This document shows, in pieces, positions 1 to 50,803 of a DNA stretch of 55,646 nucleotides (its first letter is position 1; each line of letters starts with the position of its first letter). Both the position numbers and the translations under genes were made by a program. The stretch is from the NCBI RefSeq assembly GCF_001194135.2, contig NC_068992.1, positions 41,623,554 through 41,679,199 of the forward strand, given 5' to 3'. The DNA is from Octopus bimaculoides (lineage: Eukaryota). The notes under the pieces were generated by a model, which worked only from the letters and a program-made list of their open reading frames with translations, ran no database searches and was not told the DNA's origin.

Positions 1-57
1 TGTGTGTGTGTGTGTGTATATGTATGTATATATATATATATATATATACACATAAGG

Positions 58-627
58 GATCAAAATGTTATGTTGACTCTATGGAAGACATTTGTTCTGA
101 GTTGCCTAGACCATTGTTCTCAGGTGTGGTCACTACACAATGTCAAGCGGACAGCAGAATTCGAGGCAATTCAGCGTCACTATACAACAAAGATCGCTAC
201 AGTCCTACAGATGAACTACAGAGAGCGACTGAAGGCACTAGGTCTCTACTCCCTGGAGCGCAGGCGGGAGAGATATGTAATAATATACATATCGTAAATA
301 CTGGAAGGACTGGTACAAAACCATTGCATCAAGTACTACAAGAAAGCCCGCACTAGTCGCCACTGCATGGCACCAAGGGTACCGTCCACTGCATCTCACA
401 TAAGAACTAGGTACTGCAACAGCTTCGGTTTCAGGGGACCTTAGCTCTTTAATGCCCTGCCAAAACATTTAAGAGACCTGCAAGACATGGATGTGGTGGT
501 CTTCAAGACAAAACTCGACGCCTTCCTCTCCACGATACCAGACGAACCAATGGCTGGAAATGAAACACAGTTTAGGGGAGCGATGTCAAATTCTCTTATA
601 CACCAGATGTGCCATCAAAACTCTTGA
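58..627 (+). mobile_element. CR1/L2-group non-LTR retrotransposon, ORF2 C-terminal remnant (5'-truncated, 2 premature stops)
   Basis: One frame reads LWKTFVLSCLDHCSQVWS...EAIQRHYT...NYRERLKALGLYSLERRRERYVIIYIS*ILEGLV...GFRGP*LFNALPKHLR...VFKTKLDAFLSTIPDEP...SNSLIHQ. This is the typical post-RT C-terminus of CR1/L2-type LINEs. Confidence 0.8.
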
Positions 628-1468
628 TTGGACTATATCAGGTGGAGGAGAAGAGCCATGCAAGGAACGTGAAGGGAGGACAGCATAAAGACGGAAAGTC
701 ACAGTCGTGCTCCAGCATGACCACAGCCACTTGGCTGAAACCCATAAATGAAAAAAATATATATATGCATATATATATATATATANNNNNNNNNNNNNNN
801 NNNNNNNNNNNNNNNNNNNNNNNNNNNNNNNNNNNNNNNNNNNNNNNNNNNNNNNNNNNNNNNNNNNNNNNNNNNNNNNNNNNNNNNNNNNNNNNNNNNN
901 NNNNNNNNNNNNNNNNNNNNNNNNNNNNNNNNNNNNNNNNNNNNNNNNNNNNNNNNNNNNNNNNNNNNNNNNNNNNNNNNNNNNNNNNNNNNNNNNNNNN
1001 NNNNNNNNNNNNNNNNNNNNNNNNNNNNNNNNNNNNNNNNNNNNNNNNNNNNNNNNNNNNNNNNNNNNNNNNNNNNNNNNNNNNNNNNNNNNNNNNNNNN
1101 NNNNNNNNNNNNNNNNNNNNNNNNNNNNNNNNNNNNNNNNNNNNNNNNNNNNNNNNNNNNNNNNNNNNNNNNNNNNNNNNNNNNNNNNNNNNNNNNNNNN
1201 NNNNNNNNNNNNNNNNNNNNNNNNNNNNNNNNNNNNNNNNNNNNNNNNNNNNNNNNNNNNNNNNNNNNNNNNNNNNNNNNNNNNNNNNNNNNNNNNNNNN
1301 NNNNNNNNNNNNNNNNNNNNNNNNNNNNNNNNNNNNNNNNNNNNNNNNNNNNNNNNNNNNNNNNNNNNNNNNNNNNNNNNNNNNNNNNNNNNNNNNNNNN
1401 NNNNNNNNNNNNNNNNNNNNNNNNNNNNNNNNNNNNNNNNNNNNNNNNNNNNNNNNNNNNNNNNNNNN

Positions 1469-1598: not shown

Positions 1599-1910
1599 AA
1601 GGTGCGTGGCTCAGTGGTTAGAGTGTCCAGGCTGGGAATGTGAGTTGTGAGTTCGATTCCCGGACCGGGTTCGTGTTGTGTTCTTGATCAAGTCACTTTA
1701 TTTCACTTCCAGTTCAGTTGCGACGTCACTGGTGCCAAGCTCTATCGTCCTGTTTGCTTTTCTCTTGGATAACATCAGTGGCATGGAGTGGGGAGACTGG
1801 TATGCATGGTCAACTGCTGTTCTTCCATATAACAACCTTGCCTGGGGTTGTGCCTCGGAGGGTAACTTTCTAGGTGCAATCCCATGGCTGTTCATCACTG
1901 AAGGGTGTTA
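1599..1910 (+). mobile_element. tRNA-derived SINE with CORE/V-like central motif
   Basis: Pol III A box TGGCTCAGTGG (1607-1617) and B box GAGTTCGATTCC (1649-1660), followed by TTCTTGATCAAGTCACTTTA; no tRNA 3' acceptor stem. Confidence 0.72.
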
Positions 1911-2395
1911 CCCTCATATTTCAGCCATCTATATGCCATATAGATGATATAATTACATTTTCGAATAATTAAAATACGTGCGCAATCTATAGCTACATGC
2001 ACAGTTGACATACAAAGTGAATACTCATATACGAAAGAAAACATTGCTTTCTGGGTCGATATTTGTTACATTGTGTAATATGTATTAAGTTTTCTAAATG
2101 TACATAGGAATGTTATATCGATTGTGTTTTTTTCTAGCGTATGAAGCAATATCAAATACTATACAATGAAAAACAGCAGGGAACTGAAAGGAATAAATAA
2201 AAAAAAAAAGAATCAAGCCTTATATCATGAAAAAAATCGGAACTTACAAACCAGTAAAATAAGTGTCTTTTGTTCTTATAAATAGAAAAGAAAAATATGT
2301 GTCAAATTATTGTTAAGACATTGTTTTCAGATCGGAAGCTAGTGCAAGTCATGCTATCCTTCAGATTTTACGCACGAAAATAGAAATAGCATTTT

Positions 2396-2919: not shown

Positions 2920-3595
2920 GGATCTATTTTAAAACGGGGGCGCCAGTATTTTCTTAACGAAACACTAACGAAACACTTTGAAACTTGGGACACTGGTAGA
3001 ATGTGTCATATAAAACATCTTTTACTCTTAGTCTTCTTAACAAAAAAAAAAAGGAATTCGTAAGTTATTCCATGTTAAAGTTGTCGTATTTCTGTAATTT
3101 CAACCAATCACTGACGTCTATTCAGCTCAATAGAGTCACTGCTGGGCGGTCATAAAAATATTATTCCCTGTAACATATTTCATCCGGTTTAATCGTAATT
3201 TATACGCATATATTGTTTATATAATAAATTACGCTGTGCGTATCTATGTGTGTAACAATTTTAGAGTTCGGATTCTAGAGTTAGGGTTAGTTTTAGGGTT
3301 AGGGTTAGGGTTACGGTTACGGTTAACAGTCTAGGTAGGGTTAGGGTTAGGGTTAGGGGATTAATACGATATACACCGTTACAGCGCTAACTGTTTTCAA
3401 CTGAATAGACGTCAGTGATTAGTAGAAATTATCGAAATAAGACAATTTTTTACATGAAATAAATTCGAATACAAAAATATTTTTCTGTTCTATAACACAA
3501 AATAGATAAGTATACGAAGTTTGAAAGTCTTTCCGTACCAAAAACACTACATAAAACATAAATGAAAACTGGCGCCCCCGTTTTAAAATAGATCC
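2920..3595. mobile_element. 676-bp non-autonomous DNA transposon (MITE), GG-ended TIRs, 8-bp TSD (Merlin- or Mutator-like)
   Basis: Perfect 28-bp TIR GGATCTATTTTAAAACGGGGGCGCCAGT (2920-2947) / ACTGGCGCCCCCGTTTTAAAATAGATCC (3568-3595). TSD GGATGTTC at 2912-2919 and 3596-3603. Imperfect inverted similarity extends to ~3128 and ~3397. Confidence 0.92.
3281..3358 (+). repeat. Interstitial telomere-like (TTAGGG)n array inside the MITE
   Basis: 7 perfect TTAGGG units interspersed with TTAGTT, TTACGG x2 and other variants. Confidence 0.9.
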
Positions 3596-4110
3596 GGATG
3601 TTCTCCAGCTTTACTAGTTTTGGTAGTAGAGAAAACTGCTTTCGATGAAGATCGAGGTTGGGTACCTGGTATACGGAGTGCTCGGGCAACGCCAGCGGTT
3701 TCGGTACCACCGCGGCTTACTACAGTAGGTTGGTAGAGGCTGGAAATGACGATGCCTTAGGAAGGACCCTGGGTCTCAATGACAATCAGTTAGACAGCCT
3801 GTTCCGAAGAACATTCAGACCGAAAACACTGGATAACTTCCAAAAGTCTTTGGCCTGGCAATGTTACGGAGGAGCCCTACCCGTTCGGTATAAGCTCACT
3901 TGACACGGCCACTTTGGACCGTCAGCCTGTCCAAGATGCGACGTGGAAACCGTCCTGCACGCTTTTGTTCAGTGTCTGCATGTATCAGAAGTGTGGACTT
4001 ATGCAGAACACCTGTTGTCAGATGGAAGAAAATTACAGCTATCGTCTGAGTCAATTCTAATGATTAACCTACCGGATTTCCTTACGGAAGAAGGTAAGAA
4101 ATGTTTTCTC

Positions 4111-4173
<63 letters not shown>
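4111..4173 (+). repeat. (GTA)21 microsatellite in frame in the Tx1 ORF2 remnant
   Basis: 63 bp of pure GTA, read as 21 Val between KCFL and IAREV. Confidence 0.95.
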
Positions 4174-4749
4174 ATTGCGAGAGAGGTGATGATTTAGAAG
4201 TCAAGAATAACAGGTATTGTGACAGACAGCTTTGTCTCCGGCCTCACTTTGGTGAATATTTTCACTTTTCACCTGAAAAGAAATGTGGGGCTGGAAAGGG
4301 GGTGTCTGTCAGTGTTCAAAAAAAGATGGACGCGTGTAGCAGGTATGTTGAGAGTGAAAGGCCTTGCGTGAGCACGTCATAGGGATCACCAAGGTGTCGG
4401 TAGAGAAGACAAGGCTCGTGGGGTCGGAGTATTCCTGTCTTTTAAACCCAATTTTCTGTTTCATTGTATGTAATTGTCTCTTGTGTCCCACTCGATTTTT
4501 CATTTTATCATTTTAAATTTTTATTACCATTTGATTGTATATGACACCAGATCATATTGTATTGTCCCCTCTATGTGTGCCTGTATTAGGTAATAAAAAA
4601 AGCAACTGTGAATTGTGGGTGACCATATTTATTGTTCAAATGTAAATAAAACTATTTTATCAAAATTGAAAAAATAACGTAGTGTTCCGAGAAAATTTAG
4701 GGTAGATATCAGACATAGTCCTCGAGTTAAAAGTACCTTCGTACAGTTA

Positions 4750-5991: not shown

Positions 5992-6344
5992 AGCGCAGCA
6001 GAAGTTCGTTAAATCCGGAATTCTCTCGTATTTAGTTAGTAAGTTTGCATGTGTGTCTCCCTTTTGTGATCCTCCGGATTTTGTCTGTGTTTAATCAACA
6101 ATTTAATCTCTCCAGGATTAGGCGGATTTTTACTTGTGTAGTGTACATTGGGAGTTTATTTTTATTAAAACTTTTTTTTTTTTTTTTTTACTATCAAGTA
6201 TTCAGTTCAGTATGTTTGCGCGACGTTGTGCGTGTGCGTGTGTGTGCGTGTGTGTGTTTTTCTTAGTGCAGTATTCTCTGTAGTGTTAGGCGGGTATTCT
6301 CTATTTAGTGGGGCTTTGTGTCTGTGTAGCTTTCGGGATCTGGT

Positions 6345-7325
6345 GTGTGTTCTGTGTAGTGTTTAGTCGGTGTTGTTTGTTTTAGGCTGGTGTGTGTTCA
6401 CTGTAGTGTTTAGTCGGGATGTTATCCGTTTTAGTCTGGTGTGTGTTCTCTGCAGTGTTTAGTCTGGGTATTGTCCGTTTTATGCTGGTGTGTGTTCTGT
6501 GTAGTGTTTAGTCGGGATATTGTTTGTTTTAGGCTGGTGTGCTCTGTAGTGTTTAGTCGGGGTATTGTCCGTTCTATGCTGGTGTGTGTTCTGTGTTGTA
6601 TTTAGTCGGGATATTTTTTTGTTTTTAGGCTGGTGTGTGTAGTGTTTAGTCGGGATATTGTATGTTTTAGGCTGGTGTGTGTTCTGTGTAGTGTTTAGTC
6701 GGGGTGTTATCCGTTTTAGTCTGGTGTGTGTTCTCTGCAGTGTTTAGTCGGGGTATTGTCCGTTTTATGCTGGTGTGTGTTCTGTGTTGTGTTTAGTCGG
6801 GATATTTTTTGTTTTTAGGCTGGTGTGTGTAGTGTTTAGTCGGGATATTTTTTGTTTTTAGGCTGGTGTGTGTAGTGTTTAGTCGGGATATTGTTTGTTT
6901 TAGGCTGGTGTGTGTGTTCTGTGTAGTGTTTAGTCGGGGTATTGTCTGTTTTAGGCTGGTGTGTGTGTTCTGTGTAGTGTTTAGTCGAGGTATTGTCTGT
7001 TTTAGGCTGGTGTGTGTTCTCTGCAGTGTTTAGTCGGGATATTGTTTGATTTAGGCTGGTGTGTGTTCTGTGTAGTGTTTAGTCGGGGTATTGTCCGTTT
7101 TATGCTGGTGTGTGTTCTGTGTAGTGTTTAGTCGGGGTATTGTCCGTTTTNNNNNNNNNNGAGTGTTTAGTCGGGGTATTGTCCGTTTTATGCTGGTGTG
7201 TGTTCTGTGGAGTGTTTAGTCGGGGTATTGTCCGTTTTATGCTGGTGTGTGTTCTGTGTAGTGTTTAGTCGGGGTATTGTCCGTTTTATGCTGGTATGTG
7301 TTCTGTGTAGTGTTTAGTCGGGGTA
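6345..7325. repeat. 49-bp GT-rich minisatellite, ~20 copies
   Basis: Unit GTAGTGTTTAGTCGGGGTATTGTCCGTTTTATGCTGGTGTGTGTTCTGT; AGTGTTTAGTC recurs at 7211, 7260 and 7309; 10-N gap at 7151-7160. Confidence 0.92.
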
Positions 7326-8399
7326 TTCTGTAGTATTGGGTGGTGTTCTTTGTAGTGTTAGGCGGGTATTCTCTAGTGTTTAGTGGGGTGTTTTTGTAGC
7401 TTTCTAGGGGTAATTGTCTCTGCTGGCAGTGTTAGGCAGGTATTCTCTCTTTGTGTCTCTATCCGTCTCTTTCGTGGGAGTTAATAGTGTTATATATAGG
7501 GTCTTGTCACTTTTGCTAGATGATGGCAAATTTTATTTTAGTTCTCTATATCACAAACATAATAAGAGTGCCACTCACATTCCTCTTGAATTGTATAATC
7601 AACGCAATTTTCCGTTTATTTCCATTGCTGTTTTTTTTCTAGTGTGCTTGTTCTCAATTGAATTCTCAGATTTTAGTCAAGATTTTAATATAGATCCTAA
7701 ATTACTTTGGGGCAACCTTAATACCTCGCAAATAATTTGTACATCTGTCTCCATTTTAGTTGCCTTGTTTCTGTTGTGCTGTTTGGTATTCTACTAGCTG
7801 CACTACGATATGTTGGTGTGGTACACTTAGCCCAACACCCCTATCACGGTGCTATATAAACTCCAATATATTAAATGTTTTCTCAACAACATTTCTTAAT
7901 TATTGGTACATATTTAATACGTCTAATGTTTACACATCTAAATGAATCCAGCAACAAATATTTCCAATAAATGAGCCGTTTTGTTTCTCGAGTAGTTTTT
8001 GGAAAAATGTTTTTTTTTTTTTTTTTTTAAGTATAAACTTTTCAACCAAACAACTTTGGGGTACCGAGAACTTTAGATATTACGTGTTTATCATATAAAA
8101 GTAAATTGGAATAAAATTTCATTTTGGTTATATTTTTAGACTGTTTTACATGGGTTCGAATTTTGCTTTCACTTCTTTTCCCTCCCGTTTAAACACTGCC
8201 TGAGGTAACAGGGAAGAAGAAACCCATTTTAGCCTAAATCTTTTTGTAGTATCCAATTTTTAATCTTAAAATTTGGCTTCTAATTGGACTTGTTGCATTT
8301 TCTAATGCTGGAAGGTCTATATTCTGCATTTGAAATTGATATTTAAAAAGTTTTACTCAAACGAAAACTTATATTGATAACGTTTCGTGGTTTCATTTC

Positions 8400-12003: not shown

Positions 12004-12280
12004 GGATCTAGTTTAAAACGGGGGCACCAGTTTTCATTAATGTTTCATGTTGTGTTTCTGGTACCGAAAGACTTTCAAACTTCGTATACTTATCTATTTT
12101 GTGTTATAGAACAGAAAACATTTTTGTATTCGAATTTATTTCATGTAAAAAATTGTCTTATTTCGATAATTTCTACTAATCACTGACGTCTATAACGGTG
12201 TAACGGTGTATATCGTATTAATGCCCTAACCCTAACTCTAGAATCTGAACTCTAAAATTGTTACACACATAGATACGCAC
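12004..12280 (-). mobile_element. Second, truncated copy of the 2920-3595 MITE
   Basis: Reverse complement of 3236-3595: TIR GGATCTAGTTTAAAACGGGGGCACCAGT at 12004; only two CCCTAA units (12224-12235). Confidence 0.9.
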
Positions 12281-21740: not shown

Positions 21741-22400
21741 GGACCTTTTGAGCGGGATGGTCTACTCGACCTGAAGAAAATTCTAACTGGGTCCCACCTT
21801 CGAGATAATGCGCAGTTTATCTTGATATGAGATCACCATGTGGCGCACACATGGTTGTGATGCATGTGCCTGGTTTACCCTTATCAGACGGGTAGTCATG
21901 ATGGGTATAATGGGCTTGGTATATTTTACCCCAGTGTCACTTTGATGGCATGCACTGCTCACTCACTCAATAATAATAATAATAATAATAATAATGATAA
22001 AAATAATAATAATATTATCAGACGGGTAGTCATGATGGGTATATTTAAACCCCAGTGTCACTTTGATGGTATGCAAAAAAAATATTATAATAATAATAAT
22101 AACAATAATAATAATGATGATAATAATAATAATGATAAAATGCCCTGTAGCAGTACAGGCCAGCCGCTGTTATGACTTCTTATTCAGAGGCCTTTTAAGT
22201 GGAATGGAGGAAATCCACATGGAGAAAATTCTTACTGGGATCTACCTTGAAGTTTATGGGCAAGATATCTTGATGGGTGATCACTATAACGAGTACATAT
22301 GCTTGTGGTGCATGTGCCTGGTATGCTCTTAGGAAGAATATATTAAGTTTTGTATATTTGTACCCCACCGTCACGCTGATGACACGCTTGCCCTCTCACC
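21741..22400 (+). mobile_element. Three stacked 3'-end fragments of a (TAA)n-tailed retroelement family
   Basis: 21741-21970, 22017-22072 and ~22215-22400 each match the 3' half of 37591-38065 and 39061-39617 (TCAGACGGGTAGTCATGATGGGTAT...CCCCAGTGTCACTTTGATGG), and each ends in a TAA run. Confidence 0.7.
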
Positions 22401-37590: not shown

Positions 37591-38065
37591 GTATGTACAT
37601 TGTTTTGTCTTGGTACAAAAGATGGGCTGCAGCAAATATCTTGCTCAGTACAACAAGTTTGCTTGTCAGTTATTTGACCTTAAACTGCTGGGCATCTCCC
37701 TTATTAGCTGACAATATGTACATCTCCAATCACGAGCAGAAGTAGTGGGGGAGCATCATAGCCATGTGTTGAGAGGAATTCTTTGGGGTTTGGATAATTC
37801 AACTTTGGAAACATCCTTAAACAACCATTATTCAGGGAACTTTTGAGCGGCATGGGCTACTCGACCTGAAGAAAATTCTAACTGGGCCCCACTTGCAAAG
37901 TCATGTGCTGATAATCTTGATATGAAACCACTATGTTGCATACATGTCGTTGTGATGCATGTGCCTGGTGTACCCTTATCAGACAGGTAGTCATGATGGG
38001 TATATTGGGCTTCGTATACTTTACCCCAGTGTCACTTTGATGGCATGCCCTGCTCTGTTACTCAG
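37591..38065 (+). mobile_element. (TAA)n-tailed non-coding retroelement / LINE 3'-end family copy
   Basis: Colinear with 39128-39617 (ATGTACATTGTTTTGTCTTGGTA...GGAATTCTTTGGGGTTTGGATAAT...CTCGACCTGAAGAAAATT). Confidence 0.75.
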
Positions 38066-38084
38066 TAATAATAATAGTAATACT

Positions 38085-39060: not shown

Positions 39061-39617
39061 AAGGCCTGATTCAGTGCCAGGCTGTGACTCTCATGGCTTC
39101 AGATCTTAATTGATTGGAAGTGTTATCATGTACATTGTTTTGTCTTGGTATAAAAGATGGCCTACAGCAAATATTCTGCTCAATACCACAGATTTGCTTG
39201 TCAGTTGTTTGACCTTAACCAGTTGAGCATGTCCCTTGCTGGCTGACGATATGTGTATCTCTGATCATGAGCAGCAGTAGTGGGAAAACATCATAGCCGT
39301 GTGTTGGGAGGAATTCTTTGGGGTTTGGATAATCCCTCTTTGGAAACAAGGGTGTTTCGTTCATCATCCTTAAACAACCCTTATTCAGGGACCTTTTTAG
39401 CGGATGGGTTACTCGACCTGAAGAAAATTTTTAAATGGGCCTTCCCTGCAAGGTCATATGCTGTTTATCTTGATATGAGATCACCATGTCACGCACATGT
39501 GCTTGTGATGCCTGTTCTCGTTGCATCCTTATCAGGTGTGTATTCATGATGAGTATACTAGGCTTTGTGTATTTCACACCAGTACGACTGTAACTGCATG
39601 CAATGCTCTCTCACTAA
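39061..39617 (+). mobile_element. (TAA)n-tailed non-coding retroelement / LINE 3'-end family, longest copy
   Basis: Colinear with 37591-38065 and 21741-21970. Confidence 0.75.
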
Positions 39618-39626
39618 ATAATAGTC

Positions 39627-48570: not shown

Positions 48571-49127
48571 ACTTGCTCCATTCCACCCTCTGTTTGTATT
48601 TCTACTCCTAGGTGGGCTCTGACTAAGCAGATGTGGATGGAAAACTTACCAGTCGTGAACATTTCGCCAACTGAATGAAATGTGTCTTTTCTATTCTATT
48701 TCAATGGTTTAATTTGTTACAGATTCTGTTTCTTCTTCTGGCAAATCGTGTAGAAGTACCGTCATTGATTGGAATATCTGTTGTAAGAAGTGATATTTCG
48801 GGTTCAGAGTCGTTTATCAACTTTCATATGCTCTCTTCATTTTACATGGAATCAAAGAAAATACTTTAGTCTTAGAACTTAGACTAAAGTCTATCATGAG
48901 CTCGGGAATTCCTAAATCCGGATCATAATGCTGTTTCCATGACATATAATCAACTGAGATTACGACGAACCACTTCTGCCGTCCCCGGGTTAATATCCCA
49001 GTTGAGAGGACAGAATCAATGTGAAAGGAAAAGTTTTTACAATTGTATATTTAAGAGATGAGAAATTATGTACATTATTTACATTATTTACATTTGTCGG
49101 ATATTTGTCCTCATCTTGTTTGTTGTT

Positions 49128-49173
49128 AACACAACGTTTCGGCTGATATACCCTCTAGCCTTCATCAGGTGTC
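49128..49173 (-). ncRNA. Minimal type I hammerhead ribozyme motif (minus copy)
   Basis: GACAC-CUGAUGA-A-GGCUA[gagggtatat]CAGCC-GAAAC-GUU-GUGUU; one mismatch in stem II. Confidence 0.6.
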
Positions 49174-49220
49174 TTGGGGAAATTTCGAACCTGGGTTCTC
49201 ATTCCTAAGATATTTTTCGA

Positions 49221-49286
<66 letters not shown>

Positions 49287-49480
49287 CATTACTCAGGTCC
49301 CTGCCTAGAATCAAACTCGGAATCTTGGAGTTAGTAGCCCACAGGCATATGGCGTAGGGGTTAAGAGCGCGGGCTACTAATCCGAAGATGCAGAGTTCGA
49401 TTCCAGGCAGTGACCTGGATAATAATAATAACATCGAAAAATACCTTAGGAATGAGAATCCTGGTTCGAAATTTCCCCAA

Positions 49481-49526
49481 GACACCTGATGAAGGCTGGA
49501 GGGTATATCAGCCGAAACGTTGTGTT
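49481..49526 (+). ncRNA. Minimal type I hammerhead ribozyme motif (plus copy)
   Basis: Stem I GACAC (49481-85) / GUGUU (49522-26); core CUGAUGA (49486-92); stem II GGCUG/CAGCC; GAAA (49514-17); stem III is only the palindrome ACGU; predicted cleavage after 49521 (GUU). Confidence 0.7.
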
Positions 49527-49784
49527 AACAACAAACAAAATGAGGACAAATATCCGTCAAACGTAAATAATGTAAATTATGTCGGAAAAGTTTTGTTGAA
49601 GAACATCACACGCTGTACGGTTTCGGGAATCGAAGTCACAATAGTAATTATGGCAGACACATACTGACTGTTATTGGTTTTCTTGGTGCTTACACAAAAT
49701 GTCCCAATGATTGCGAATTTTCAAACGGGAAAAATGTTACCCTTAAATGAAAGTAAATAGAAAATTCCCATTTTCATAACTGCG

Positions 49785-50390
49785 CTCTTCTCTTTCCCTT
49801 CTCACCACTATTTCTCTTCACCCTTTTCCTCACTCCTTCTCCTCACCGTCGTTTCTCCTCTCTCTTATCCCCTTCTGTCCTCCCTGTTCTCCCCTCCTTT
49901 TTCTCCCCTTCTCTCCTCCTTTTCTCTTCACTTCTCTCCTCCCTTTTCCCTCCCCTTCTCTTCTCCCGCTTCTCTCCCCTTCTCTCCTCCTCTTCTCTTC
50001 CTTCTTTCCTCCCTCTTCTTTCCTCTTTCTCTCTTCCCTCTTCGCTCCCTGTCTCCCCTCCCTCTTTTAGCCCTACTCTTCTCCCTCTTCTCCCCTTCTC
50101 TCCTCCCTCTCCTCCCCTTCTCTCCTCCCATTCCTCCCCTCCTTTTTCTCCCCTTCTCTCCTCCCCTTCTCTCCTCCCCTTCTCTCCTCCATCTTCTCTC
50201 CCCTTCTCTCCTCCTTCTATTCTCCTCTATTCTCTCTTCGCTCCTTTTCTCTCGTCCCTCTTCTAATACTTCTCTCCTTCCCCCTTCACCTTCTCCCCAT
50301 GCCCTTTCCTTTCTCCCCTTCTTCCCTGCTCCCACTCCTTCTCCTCTTTTTCTCTTCTCCCCCTTCTTCCCCTACTCCTTGCTTCTCATT
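49785..50390. repeat. ~600-bp polypyrimidine/polypurine tract with a CCCCTTCTCTCCT-type 13-bp unit
   Basis: Plus strand is almost purine-free; 13-bp periodicity is clear at 50145-50200. Confidence 0.9.
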
Positions 50391-50803
50391 ACTTGTCACC
50401 AAGACTAGTATCTCCACTTATCCTTCACAATTTATATTAATTTTCTCTGTATCTCTCTTATATGCTCTCTTTATCTCTACACATATATCGTGAAAATTGC
50501 GAGTCCAGCGATAACAAACCAACCAATAAACAAGCAAACCAACCAACGAAATTACCAAACAACCAAGTAATATCCAAATAGCTTTTTATATCAGTTTTTA
50601 TTCAAAAGAGTCACATTTCGTCATTTTAATATTTTCCTAACACAGACTTCTAGGCAAAGCTTGTAGAAAAAAAGGCTTAAGCTATTAAGCGATCCCAGCA
50701 TTTGCCTATTATGTTATTGACTCGCAAAAGGAAATCTGGCCACAGTTGAATTTGAACTGAGGTTGTAAAGTGCTATGACATACGCCTCGTTCTTAATGAT
50801 TTG

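What the first reader, a model, noticed from the sequence alone, without database searches (positions are those of the whole stretch)
49072..49582. Pol III SINE with a hammerhead ribozyme tail, arranged as a ~510-bp palindrome with one ribozyme on each strand
Seen: a tRNA-like head (GGCGTAGGGGTTAAGAGCGCGGGCTACTAATCCGAAGATGCAGAGTTCGATTCCAGG, resembling tRNA-Arg(ACG) from memory), an (ATA)n spacer, then a complete minimal hammerhead core (CUGAUGA / stem II / GAAAC / GUU / stem I). A second copy, truncated inside the tRNA head, is joined head-to-head across a 30-nt loop. Known: minimal hammerheads with a palindromic stem III (here ACGU) are typical of Penelope-like element termini and retrozymes and cleave as dimers; Penelope insertions often carry inverted partial repeats; ordinary SINEs instead take LINE 3' tails. 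Inference: this may be a tRNA-promoter SINE mobilised by a Penelope RT. It may also act as a switch: a Pol III transcript from the A box contains only the free ribozyme, while a read-through transcript folds into ~200 bp of dsRNA that masks the ribozyme and is a strong ADAR substrate.
Basis: partly seen in the sequence, partly recalled or inferred. Interest (0 to 1): 0.85.

Follow-up and report, generated by a model that had tools for sequence, protein, structure and literature searches.

The report
Octopus-type SINE carrying a hammerhead ribozyme
This is a decaying insertion of a small, tRNA-promoter-driven jumping element whose back half carries a Penelope-type minimal hammerhead ribozyme, and its mirror-image shape looks like the scar of how it integrated rather than a device.

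Summary
Window 49072-49582 is a 511-bp palindrome made of two copies of one repeat. Each arm carries a complete minimal type-I hammerhead. These are the only two descriptor hits in the window, with none in 300 shuffles. The full copy starts with a tRNA-like head that has Pol III A and B boxes but no tRNA fold.

The repeat is a real dispersed family. One copy is annotated in Octopus bimaculoides and five further DNA loci were recovered. Three of those five loci show the same head-to-head layout. The layout is a full-length copy, an inverted 5'-truncated copy carrying a 34-nt tail, and 10-11-nt flanking repeats. Published work describes this as typical of Penelope-like element integration.

Two other families share only the 68-nt hammerhead module with this one. 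One has a tRNA-like head, and both occur as tandem arrays. Compensatory changes between families support helices I and II.

Within the octopus-type family the catalytic core decays as fast as its flanks. So this locus is not under selection for ribozyme function. No Penelope reverse transcriptase was found.

The proposed Pol III / read-through "switch" and ADAR role have no support beyond thermodynamics.

Verdict: new member of a known kind, and moderately interesting.

The parts
49027..49037 (.). Left copy of the candidate target-site duplication GGAAAAGTTTT
   Evidence: 11-nt exact direct repeat flanking the whole unit. A shared word of at least 11 nt occurs in 2.2% of random flank pairs in this window and in 0.17% of shuffles. 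Analogous 10-nt flanking repeat in L004/L005.
49038..49071 (-). 34-nt 3' 'tail' extension of the L copy, absent from the R copy
   Evidence: It continues family sequence. Independent copies P0001, P0020, P0031 and P0045 read through it (HN[F/S]SSLKY...), and it is seen at DNA level in L001, L004 and L006. One-sided 30-40-bp tails are described for PLE insertions (PMC8557442).
49072..49340 (-). L copy: inverted, 5'-truncated SINE, cut inside the tRNA-like head at the equivalent of R position 49371
   Evidence: Alignment A1; inverted repeats I1 and I2.
49128..49173 (-). Minimal hammerhead of the L copy; helix II weakened by a G-to-A change at 49156; predicted cleavage 49133/49132
   Evidence: Descriptor hit with 4-bp helix II; differences listed.
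49222..49284 (-). (ATT)21 internal microsatellite of the L copy, i.e. (AAT)n in the sense of the element
   Evidence: An A/T-rich microsatellite occupies the same position in L003, L004, L006 and L007.
49341..49343 (.). 3-nt junction filler (ACA) between the two copies
   Evidence: Read from the sequence. L004 has an 18-nt filler at the same junction.
49344..49582 (+). R copy: full-length SINE without the tail
   Evidence: 5' end GGCATATGGCG is shared with the full-length copy in L004 at position 864. 3' end defined by the end of arm similarity.
49344..49418 (+). tRNA-like head with Pol III boxes (A box 49350-49360, B box 49394-49404)
   Evidence: Not a foldable tRNA by ARAGORN or Rfam.
49419..49430 (+). 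(ATA)4 spacer of the R copy
49481..49526 (+). Minimal type-I hammerhead of the R copy, intact; predicted cleavage 49521/49522
   Evidence: Identical to the consensus of the family alignment. Helices supported across families.
49482..49549 (+). 68-nt module (hammerhead plus about 23 nt 3' of it) conserved between three otherwise unrelated repeat families
   Evidence: blastn of L008-L011 against the window gives 73-84% identity confined to this stretch, sometimes extended to 49580.
49584..49594 (.). Right copy of the candidate target-site duplication; its TTTT (49591-49594) is the first Pol III terminator downstream of the A box

Best explanation
The locus is one old insertion of a non-autonomous retroposon from an octopod-type genome, roughly 8 My old by inference.

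The element is about 240-275 bp and has four parts: a tRNA-derived Pol III promoter head, an internal (AAT)n microsatellite, a body of about 50 nt, and a 3' module. The 3' module contains a Penelope-type minimal type-I hammerhead. This hammerhead has no helix III hairpin, and its ACGU site can pair only with a second copy in trans.

Shown:
- the anatomy of the element;
- that the family is dispersed;
- that head-to-head pairs recur;
- that the tail is one-sided;
- that the whole unit is flanked by short repeats;
- that the hammerhead module is conserved and covaries between families;
- that copies within the family decay neutrally.

Inferred:
- The element is transcribed by Pol III from the A/B boxes to a flanking T-run.
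- A Penelope-like RT/GIY-YIG enzyme recognises the hammerhead-containing 3' module because that module copies the enzyme's own 3' end or pseudo-LTR.
- That enzyme's unusual target-primed integration lays down, in one event, a full copy plus an inverted 5'-truncated copy, a 34-nt tail at one end, and a 10-11-bp target duplication.
- The palindrome is therefore an integration scar.
- The ribozyme mattered in the source element, for RNA processing as a dimer or as the RT's recognition fold, and not at this locus.
For: - Palindrome and arms.
- Hammerhead found only here, with none in 300 shuffles.
- All four published non-descriptor hallmarks of PLE min-HHRs (PMC4209133) are present: a base between A9 and 10.1, a G10.1-C11.1 pair, a palindromic 15.2/16.2, and covariation between families.
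- A/B boxes at the correct spacing, with no T4 run until the flank.
- Family membership: one O. bimaculoides protein, 50 cluster representatives, and DNA copies L001-L007.
- Head-to-head inverted 5'-truncated partner in the window, L001, L004 and L007, and also in the sister-family loci L008 and L011.
- Flanking repeats around the whole unit: 11 nt in the window and 10 nt in L004/L005.
- The tail is family sequence but present at one end only.
- The arms are 94.5% alike, against 74-84% to any other copy, as expected if both arose in one event.
- The PLE literature describes exactly this layout (PMC8557442; PMC8969392).
- Octopus genomes carry active Penelope elements and hundreds of unclassified SINE families (PMC13282606).
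Against: - No Penelope RT or GIY-YIG ORF in the window. The RT near L008 reads as LINE-type.
- No autonomous element sharing the 3' module could be retrieved, so the partner is inferred only from the integration signature and the ribozyme type.
- The 11-nt flanking repeat is only moderately unlikely in this repeat-rich window (2.2%).
- The head portions of the two arms differ by 17%, against 5.5% for the rest. A single-template, single-event origin does not predict this.
- Within the family the catalytic core is no better conserved than its flanks.
- The host organism is inferred from a single named UniRef protein.
- Pol III transcription and cleavage are untested.
Confidence: 0.68

Rival explanations
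1. It is an ordinary LINE-mobilised tRNA-SINE. The inverted pair arose from two independent insertions (a SINE landing next to a SINE) or from L1-style twin priming, and the hammerhead is an inherited passenger.
For: LINE fragments lie in the window: a weak zf-RVT hint at 3904-4194 and LINE-like C-terminal ORFs at 1-700. An RT that reads as LINE-type lies near L008. SINEs normally use LINE partners. No PLE ORF was found.
Against: - The SINE shares no sequence with any LINE fragment in the window.
- Both arms contain the same 3' terminus. Twin priming instead yields different, contiguous parts of one RNA.
- The flanking repeat brackets the whole unit, not either arm.
- Head-to-head pairs recur in 6 of 8 assessable loci, far too often for chance nesting.
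- The arms are much closer to each other than to other copies.
Confidence: 0.15
2. It is a foldback or MITE-type DNA transposon whose terminal inverted repeats happen to include a hammerhead-like sequence.
For: The overall palindromic shape. A genuine MITE-like palindrome with 107-nt TIRs lies 1.2 kb away at 50813-51316.
Against: - The outer ends are unequal, with the tail on one side only.
- The inner junction falls at different positions in different loci: about q37/q105 in L007, q192 in L004 and q146 in L001. This is typical of 5' truncation by reverse transcription and not of fixed TIRs.
- A Pol III promoter head sits at the centre.
- Tandem direct arrays occur in the sister families.
Confidence: 0.04
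3. The palindrome is a selected RNA switch. Pol III transcripts expose an active ribozyme, while read-through Pol II transcripts mask it in about 200 bp of dsRNA that ADAR edits.
For: Thermodynamics allow it: the ribozyme fold is -13.0 kcal/mol and the antisense-arm duplex is -111.7 kcal/mol. The whole hairpin folds at -315.7 kcal/mol. From general knowledge, cephalopods edit RNA extensively and long inverted repeats are ADAR substrates when transcribed.
Against: - Any inverted repeat has this property.
- The layout is explained by integration and recurs at unrelated loci.
- The copies decay neutrally, catalytic core included.
- The L-arm helix II is already damaged.
- Monomeric min-HHRs are reported as inactive in vitro (PMC4209133).
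- There is no expression or editing data.
Confidence: 0.05
4. It is a metazoan non-LTR retrozyme: a tandem hammerhead repeat that propagates through self-cleaved, ligated circular RNAs.
For: It carries a type-I hammerhead and is non-autonomous. The sister families in L008-L011 form 113-129-bp tandem arrays with one intact hammerhead per unit. Retrozymes are argued to be PLE-dependent (PMC7229834).
Against: - The window family is not tandem. Copies are solitary or inverted.
- The hammerhead is the minimal PLE type, not the canonical type with loop-loop contacts that defines animal retrozymes (PMC7229834).
- A tRNA-like Pol III head is not a described retrozyme feature.
Confidence: 0.06

Closest known systems
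Sm-alpha / Sj-alpha SINE-like retroposons of Schistosoma (Ferbeyre et al. 1998; Laha et al. 2000; summarised in PMC6765202)
   Same: Short non-autonomous repeat with a tRNA-type Pol III promoter followed by a type-I hammerhead. High copy number. The ribozyme works best with two copies present.
   Different: Sm-alpha carries a canonical, highly active hammerhead with loop-loop contacts and occurs largely in tandem. The element here has the minimal, helix-III-less PLE-type hammerhead, an internal (AAT)n, and head-to-head inverted insertion units.
Minimal hammerheads in the pseudo-LTRs of Penelope-like elements (Cervera & de la Pena 2014, PMC4209133)
   Same: Short helix I (3-5 bp), longer helix II (6 bp), an unpaired base between A9 and 10.1, G10.1-C11.1, and a palindromic 15.2/16.2 with no loop 3. 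That paper reports pairs of motifs 100-700 bp apart on opposite strands.
   Different: There is no RT/GIY-YIG ORF and no pseudo-LTR. Here the motif sits behind a tRNA-like Pol III head in a 240-275-bp element.
PLE insertion architecture (Craig et al. 2021, PMC8557442; Goubert et al. 2022, PMC8969392)
   Same: An inverted 5'-truncated copy abutting the 5' end, a 30-40-bp tail at one end only, partial tandems, and an association with microsatellites.
   Different: That architecture is described for autonomous elements of 3-4 kb. Here it is seen on a SINE-sized element, which implies trans-mobilisation.
Metazoan non-LTR retrozymes (Cervera & de la Pena 2020, PMC7229834; Li, Clavereau & Pollet 2026 preprint 10.64898/2026.07.22.740005)
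   Same: Non-autonomous repeats carrying a type-I hammerhead and proposed to depend on PLEs. The sister families in L008-L010 are tandem.
   Different: Retrozymes are tandem, use canonical hammerheads, and have no described Pol III head. The window family is dispersed or inverted and uses a minimal hammerhead.
Octopus CORE-SINEs OR1/OR2 (Ohshima & Okada 1994, as cited in PMC4758252 and PMC4824008)
   Same: tRNA-derived SINEs of octopus. A probable member lies in the same window at 1607-1920.
   Different: They are defined by the CORE domain, and no ribozyme is reported for them. The hammerhead SINE shares no body sequence with the 1607 element.

Membership tests
PLE-type minimal hammerhead (min-HHR) | Catalytic core CUGANGA ... 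GAAA ... UH in type-I order | tested here: met
   Both arms; the only hits in the window; 0 hits in 300 shuffles.
PLE-type minimal hammerhead (min-HHR) | Unpaired nucleotide between A9 and 10.1, and a G10.1-C11.1 pair | tested here: met
   A49493, then G49494-C49513. The bulged A is invariant in 12 instances, and G-C is present in 8 of 12.
PLE-type minimal hammerhead (min-HHR) | No helix III hairpin; palindromic 15.2/16.2 allowing a trans-dimer helix III | tested here: met
   ACGU at 49517-20. AACGUU forms a self-duplex at -5.7 kcal/mol. C15.2 and G16.2 are invariant in 12 instances even though the selection pattern left them free.
PLE-type minimal hammerhead (min-HHR) | Helices supported by covariation between families | tested here: met
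   78% of cells paired, against 11-49% for slid controls. Two pairs show compensatory double changes. The sample is small, with three lineages.
PLE-type minimal hammerhead (min-HHR) | Self-cleavage, as a dimer | not testable with these tools
   Needs in vitro transcription of dimeric constructs.
Rfam hammerhead families | Match to a curated covariance model | tested here: not met
   No hit even at E <= 10. Intact tandem min-HHRs in L008/L009 are missed too, so the models do not cover this class.
SINE (tRNA-derived, SINE2) | Internal Pol III promoter: A and B boxes at tRNA-like spacing at the 5' end | tested here: met
   49350-60 and 49394-404, 33 nt apart. Expected 0.001 times per shuffled window.
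SINE (tRNA-derived, SINE2) | Short, dispersed, multi-copy, with 5' truncations and target-site duplications | tested here: met
   About 240-275 bp. Copies found. Variable 5' truncation points. Flanking repeats.
SINE (tRNA-derived, SINE2) | 3' end shared with the autonomous partner that mobilises it | not testable with these tools
   No octopus PLE or LINE 3' ends were accessible. No similarity to LINE fragments inside the window.
SINE (tRNA-derived, SINE2) | Transcription by RNA polymerase III | not testable with these tools
   Only consistent features: the boxes, no T4 run on the sense strand, and TTTT in the flank.
tRNA gene | Cloverleaf recognised by ARAGORN or Rfam RF00005 | tested here: not met
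   No call at default settings. ARAGORN calls something only at 70% of its threshold or below, and then on the L arm plus the junction.
Penelope-like element (autonomous) | ORF with a PLE-type RT and (in EN+ clades) a GIY-YIG endonuclease | tested here: not met
   No RVT or GIY-YIG among the 150 longest ORFs of the window. The candidate ORF 28411-27935 has no family and no homologues.
Penelope-like element (integration signature only) | Inverted 5'-truncated copy at the 5' end, one-sided 30-40-bp tail, partial tandems | tested here: met
   Window, L001/L004/L007, and L008/L011.
Metazoan non-LTR retrozyme | Head-to-tail tandem repeats, each unit with a hammerhead | tested here: not met
   Window copies are inverted, and the other copies of this family are solitary or inverted. 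The feature is met only by the sister families.
Metazoan non-LTR retrozyme | Unit-length circular RNA | not testable with these tools
   No RNA data available.

The most novel reading that the evidence does not exclude
The 68-nt hammerhead module may be the conserved 'central domain' of an unrecognised, phylogenetically wide superfamily of tRNA-headed SINEs that are mobilised in trans by Penelope-like elements. In that case the ribozyme fold itself would be what the Penelope RT/EN recognises or processes. This would link three things that are so far described separately: SINE superfamily domains, dispersed animal min-hammerheads, and the odd inverted/tandem PLE integration products. The evidence so far is three families that share only this module (two with tRNA-like heads), thousands of copies of one family in one unidentified animal, and the same integration scars in all of them.
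Probability: 0.3. Interest if true: 0.7.

Novelty: new member of a known kind. Interest (0 to 1): 0.45.

Why it matters
What mobilises the tens of thousands of dispersed minimal hammerheads in animal genomes, and what the ribozyme does for Penelope-like elements, are still open questions. The 2014 paper proposes RNA processing, the 2021 paper suggests the hammerheads may merely parasitise PLEs, and a 2026 preprint argues that retrozymes are PLE passengers.

A SINE-sized element with its own Pol III promoter gives a compact natural substrate for these questions. It carries only the hammerhead module from the PLE world, yet it shows the full PLE integration scar: inverted partner, one-sided tail and short target duplication. 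With such an element one could test whether the hammerhead module is sufficient for recognition by a PLE reverse transcriptase, and how the inverted copies arise.

For genome annotation, it means that part of the 'unclassified SINE' load of octopus genomes may be PLE-dependent. It also shows that Rfam-based scans do not see this ribozyme class.

For this particular locus the practical message is modest. It is a decaying repeat, not a regulatory device.

Tried and rejected
1. Rfam at gathering threshold and at E <= 10 gave no hammerhead or tRNA hit. This later proved uninformative for this class.
2. ARAGORN found no tRNA at default settings. The low-threshold calls are artefacts that span the junction.
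3. Exact-pattern scans of metagenome, prokaryote-genome and viral contig collections with the hammerhead pattern gave 0 hits. These collections hold essentially no cephalopod DNA.
4. I read ORF 28411-27935 as a GIY-YIG endonuclease. That reading is rejected: no Pfam family and no homologue among 5.8 billion proteins.
5. A Pfam scan of the 150 longest non-trivial ORFs of the window found no RT or GIY-YIG.
6. Looking up the window's own spurious ORF, and P0001, in the contig index found neither on record.
7. The RT beside L008 reads as LINE-type by its motifs, not Penelope-type. The Pfam call on it failed on a stop codon and I did not repeat it.
8. I tried to identify the source organisms from run and assembly accessions in the literature and in cluster names. 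Nothing was found.
9. A full-text search for the module's signature strings returned only primer noise.
10. I considered identity with the octopus SINEs OR1/OR2. Those are CORE-SINEs, and the CORE-like element in this window (1607-1920) is unrelated to the hammerhead SINE.
11. Lunse et al. 2017 (PMC5785218) is not held in the library.
Full report
**1. What is at the coordinates**

The region 49072-49582 is a near-perfect palindrome. The outer arms are 49072-49235 and 49419-49582 (164 nt, 95% complementary). The inner arms are 49280-49340 and 49371-49431 (61 nt, 82%). The centre is 30 nt. An (ATT)21 run in the left arm faces an (ATA)4 run in the right arm.

Aligning the right arm (R, plus strand) with the reverse complement of the left arm (L) shows two copies of one repeat. 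R is complete at its 5' end. L is cut inside the tRNA-like head. Nothing else in the 55.6-kb window resembles the repeat apart from (ATT)n microsatellites.

The window itself looks like a eukaryotic draft assembly, with twelve N gaps, about 33% G+C and many simple repeats.

**2. The hammerhead**

Read directly from the sequence, the R copy has the following parts:
- stem I, GACAC (49481-85) pairing with GUGUU (49522-26);
- CUGAUGA (49486-92);
- one unpaired A (49493);
- a 6-bp helix II, GGCUGG/UCAGCC, closing an 8-nt loop;
- GAAA (49514-17);
- the palindrome ACGU with no loop, then U17 (49521).

This is type-I order, open at stem I. The predicted cleavage site is 49521/49522. On the minus strand the mirror site is 49133/49132.

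A descriptor encoding these features hits only these two places in the whole window on both strands, and none in 300 Markov-shuffled windows. The stems I+II structure lies within 0.6 kcal/mol of the monomer's minimum free energy. AACGUU is self-complementary, which gives the trans-dimer helix III.

Rfam reports no hammerhead even at E <= 10. It also misses intact tandem copies of the same ribozyme type in other loci. So Rfam's models do not cover hammerheads that lack a helix III hairpin, and the negative carries no weight.

The motif has every non-descriptor hallmark that Cervera and de la Pena listed for the minimal hammerheads of Penelope-like elements: short helix I, long helix II, a base between A9 and 10.1, G10.1-C11.1, and a palindromic 15.2/16.2 (PMC4209133).

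**3. The head**

TGGCGTAGGGG (49350-60) fits the relaxed A-box pattern I scanned (TRGCNNANNGG) exactly. AGTTCGATTCC (49394-404) fits the B box at 10 of 11 positions, 33 nt downstream. An A+B pair at that spacing is expected 0.001 times per shuffled window.

The sense strand has no T4 run until TTTT at 49591-94 in the flank. A Pol III unit that terminates in flanking DNA would look like this.

The head is not a foldable tRNA. ARAGORN and Rfam find none. ARAGORN calls something only at 70% of its threshold or below, and that call spans the junction. The anticodon-loop position reads ACU.

**4. It is a real, dispersed family, probably from an octopod**

The R copy is open in one reading frame, so I used its conceptual translation as a probe for spurious ORFs called on other copies.
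- The word-indexed search found one protein, UniRef A0A0L8FV75 of Octopus bimaculoides (79% identity).
- The exhaustive HMMER search found 50 cluster representatives.
- About 22 of these are clearly the same family. Their consensus reads MRTQVRNFPKTPDEGWRVYQPKRCVNNKQDEDKYPSNVNNVNN.

DNA for five independent loci was retrieved from Logan assemblies of runs SRR11869384/85/91/94 (L001-L007). They match the window copy at 74-84% from the microsatellite to the 3' end. They also share other window repeats, so they come from a related host. The species of the window is not established.

**5. The palindrome is a recurrent integration product**

Three of the five external loci carry a second, 5'-truncated copy in inverted orientation directly upstream of the first. 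In the other two, the copy begins within 20 nt of the contig end, so they cannot be assessed.

L004 is the clearest case, and it was seen again in a second run as L005. Its layout, from left to right, is:
- ATAAATAGTA;
- the tail and an inverted copy truncated just 3' of the hammerhead;
- 18 nt of filler;
- a full-length copy starting at the same GGCATATGGCG as window position 49344, and lacking the tail;
- ATAAATAGTA again. This 10-nt repeat is reached by 1% of shuffles.

The window has the same design. GGAAAAGTTTT occurs at 49027-37 and again at 49584-94, two bases after the palindrome ends. Between the left repeat and the L arm lie 34 nt.

Those 34 nt are family sequence, not flank. The O. 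bimaculoides copy and three others read through them (HN[F/S]SSLKY...), while similarity to the R flank stops at the end of the arm. L001, L004 and L006 show the tail at DNA level.

The junction position differs from locus to locus, as 5' truncation by a reverse transcriptase predicts. In L001 both arms share the same private mutation of the core. The window's arms are 94.5% alike, against at most 84% to any other copy. Both observations are expected if the two arms of a unit arise together.

Craig et al. describe this layout for Penelope-like elements: an inverted 5'-truncated copy adjacent to the 5' end and a 30-40-bp tail at one end only (PMC8557442; also PMC8969392). Cervera and de la Pena noted pairs of min-hammerheads 100-700 bp apart on opposite strands.

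**6. Sister families and the conserved module**

The other hits belong to different repeats found in long ENA contigs (ERZ21867824) and in NCBI assembly GCA_052426985.1. One of these families yields 2,812 spurious ORFs.

In L008, a 129-bp unit with an intact min-hammerhead (CAC CUGAAGA A GGCCGG...UCGGCC GAAAC GUU GUG) is repeated 2.7 times in tandem. This array is joined head-to-head to a full copy on the other strand. That copy begins with a tRNA-like head (A box TGGCGTAACGG, B-like GGTTCAATTC). The unit is flanked by CTTAAAAA[C/T]TG. A third variant forms a 3x tandem array in L010.

These loci share only 49482-49549 with the window, occasionally extended to 49580. That is the hammerhead plus about 23 nt, at 73-84% identity.

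On an alignment of twelve hammerhead instances, the named structure pairs 78% of cells, against 11-49% when the 3' partners are slid. One pair in helix I (C-G to U-A) and one in helix II (C-G to U-A through U-G) change on both sides. The D/E difference between the translated families is GAU/GAA, which falls on N7, the one free core position.

One caveat applies. The instances were selected by their core motif, so core invariance is partly by construction. Only C15.2, G16.2 and U17 were free in the pattern, and they are invariant.

**7. No selection at the level of copies**

In the five external copies of the window's own family, every hammerhead has core mutations. The alignment consensus reproduces the intact ribozyme. 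Identity to the window copy is 78.5% at the 13 invariant core positions and 75.0% in the non-ribozyme body (Fisher p = 0.65).

So the ribozyme mattered for the source elements. Between families the module is the only conserved part. Inserted copies decay neutrally, and the L arm has already lost one helix II pair.

The arms differ by a Jukes-Cantor distance of 0.057. The calibration in PMC13282606 equates 0.065 to consensus with 18 My. On that scale the insertion would be about 8 My old, if the arms were identical at insertion. This age is an inference.

**8. What could not be shown**

No RT or GIY-YIG domain occurs among the 150 longest ORFs of the window. My reading of ORF 28411-27935 as GIY-YIG was wrong. 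The RT beside L008 reads as LINE-type.

No octopus Penelope sequence was reachable, so the key test remains open: does an autonomous element end in this module? Assigning the RT to a Penelope-like element rests on two things, the ribozyme type and the integration scar.

One observation does not fit neatly. The head portions of the arms differ by 17% (8 of 47), against 5.5% (9 of 164) for the rest, and only three of the eight head differences are in CpG context. Possible causes are faster decay of the GC-richer head, two template RNAs in one event, or error-prone synthesis at the junction.

**9. Mechanism and rivals**

The most likely account has these steps:
- Pol III transcribes the element from its tRNA-like head into a flanking T-run.
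- A Penelope-like RT/EN recognises the hammerhead-containing 3' module, which copies the enzyme's own 3' end.
- Its integration produces a full copy, an inverted truncated copy with a tail, and a 10-11-bp target duplication.

As a monomer the min-hammerhead is expected to be nearly inactive (PMC4209133). A Pol III monomer transcript would therefore stay intact, which a template needs. Cleavage would require two copies in trans or in tandem.

I weighed four rivals:
- Two independent LINE-driven insertions, or twin priming. These fit poorly. Both arms contain the 3' terminus, the repeats flank the whole unit, and the layout recurs.
- A TIR or foldback DNA element. This fits poorly. The ends are unequal and the junctions vary.
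- A retrozyme. The window family is not tandem and its hammerhead is not canonical. The sister families come closer to this description.
It follows from thermodynamics that any inverted repeat would show (-111.7 against -13 kcal/mol; -315.7 kcal/mol for the whole hairpin). Nothing in the sequence evidence points to selection for it.

**10. Comparison with what is known, and verdict**

Three things are already published:
- tRNA-promoter SINE-like elements with hammerheads, known since Sm-alpha (1998; PMC6765202);
- min-hammerheads in Penelope pseudo-LTRs (2014);
- animal retrozymes as PLE passengers (2020-2026).

In the literature I could search, nothing links an octopus SINE, or any tRNA-headed SINE outside schistosomes, to a PLE-type min-hammerhead. 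The known octopus SINEs OR1/OR2 are CORE-SINEs.

I therefore file it as a new member of a known kind. Its main inference is partly supported. Its functional speculation is not supported. The locus itself is an ordinary decaying repeat. The family, and the module shared across families, deserve a proper genome-wide study.

Noticed in passing
window 1607-1920 (+): A second, unrelated tRNA-headed SINE. It has an exact A+B box pair (TGGCTCAGTGG ... GAGTTCGATTCC) followed by a body with a stretch that I read as CORE-like (AAGTCACTT...AGTTCAGTT). It may be of the octopus OR1/OR2 CORE-SINE type. It has no hammerhead and lies directly after a (GT)n run and an N gap.
   Followed up: partly
window 50813-51316: A second palindrome 1.2 kb from the finding, with 107-nt terminal inverted repeats (90%) around an AT-rich interior and no hammerhead. 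It looks like a MITE-type DNA element.
   Followed up: partly
L008 9700-10379; L009 10069-10310; L010 3170-3500; L011 (ENA ERZ21867824 and NCBI GCA_052426985.1): Two further repeat families with intact minimal hammerheads in tandem units of about 113-129 bp. One has more than 2,800 spurious ORFs in the protein collection, plus a tRNA-like head and a head-to-head inverted partner. The host animal is unidentified.
   Followed up: partly
L008 10123-10303, L009 10084-10260 (method note): Rfam 15 hammerhead models give no hit at E <= 0.1 on intact tandem minimal hammerheads. Rfam-based scans therefore systematically miss this Penelope-type class.
   Followed up: yes
window 49294-49340 versus 49371-49417: The tRNA-head portions of the two arms differ by 17%, while the rest of the arms differ by 5.5%. 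Only 3 of the 8 head differences are in CpG context. A single-template, single-event origin does not explain this.
   Followed up: partly
window 6271-7397: A large degenerate tandem (minisatellite-like) array. Self-matches are 77-84% identical at many offsets, and strand composition is strongly skewed (GC skew +0.36, AT skew -0.49 in 6001-8000).
   Followed up: no
window 1-700 (+) and 3794-4194 (+): Decayed ORF fragments that look LINE-derived: a C-terminal RT-like reading (...YSLERRRERY...) and a weak zf-RVT hint (E 0.022, below the curated cutoff). They share no sequence with the hammerhead SINE.
   Followed up: partly
window 49780-50400: About 600 bp of CT-rich low-complexity sequence (degenerate CTCC/TTCTC units) starts about 200 bp downstream of the element. 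It produces long spurious ORFs on both strands.
   Followed up: no
window 37593-38070 / 39128-39623; 3342-3595 / 12004-12240; 21741-21987 / 37836-38082: Other interspersed repeat pairs within the window (78-89% identity, some inverted). They were not classified.
   Followed up: no
L001 738-1006: Both arms of this inverted pair carry the same private mutation of the hammerhead core (CTGATGA changed to a TTCGAA-containing sequence). This implies the two arms were copied from one already-mutated source, or were homogenised afterwards.
   Followed up: partly
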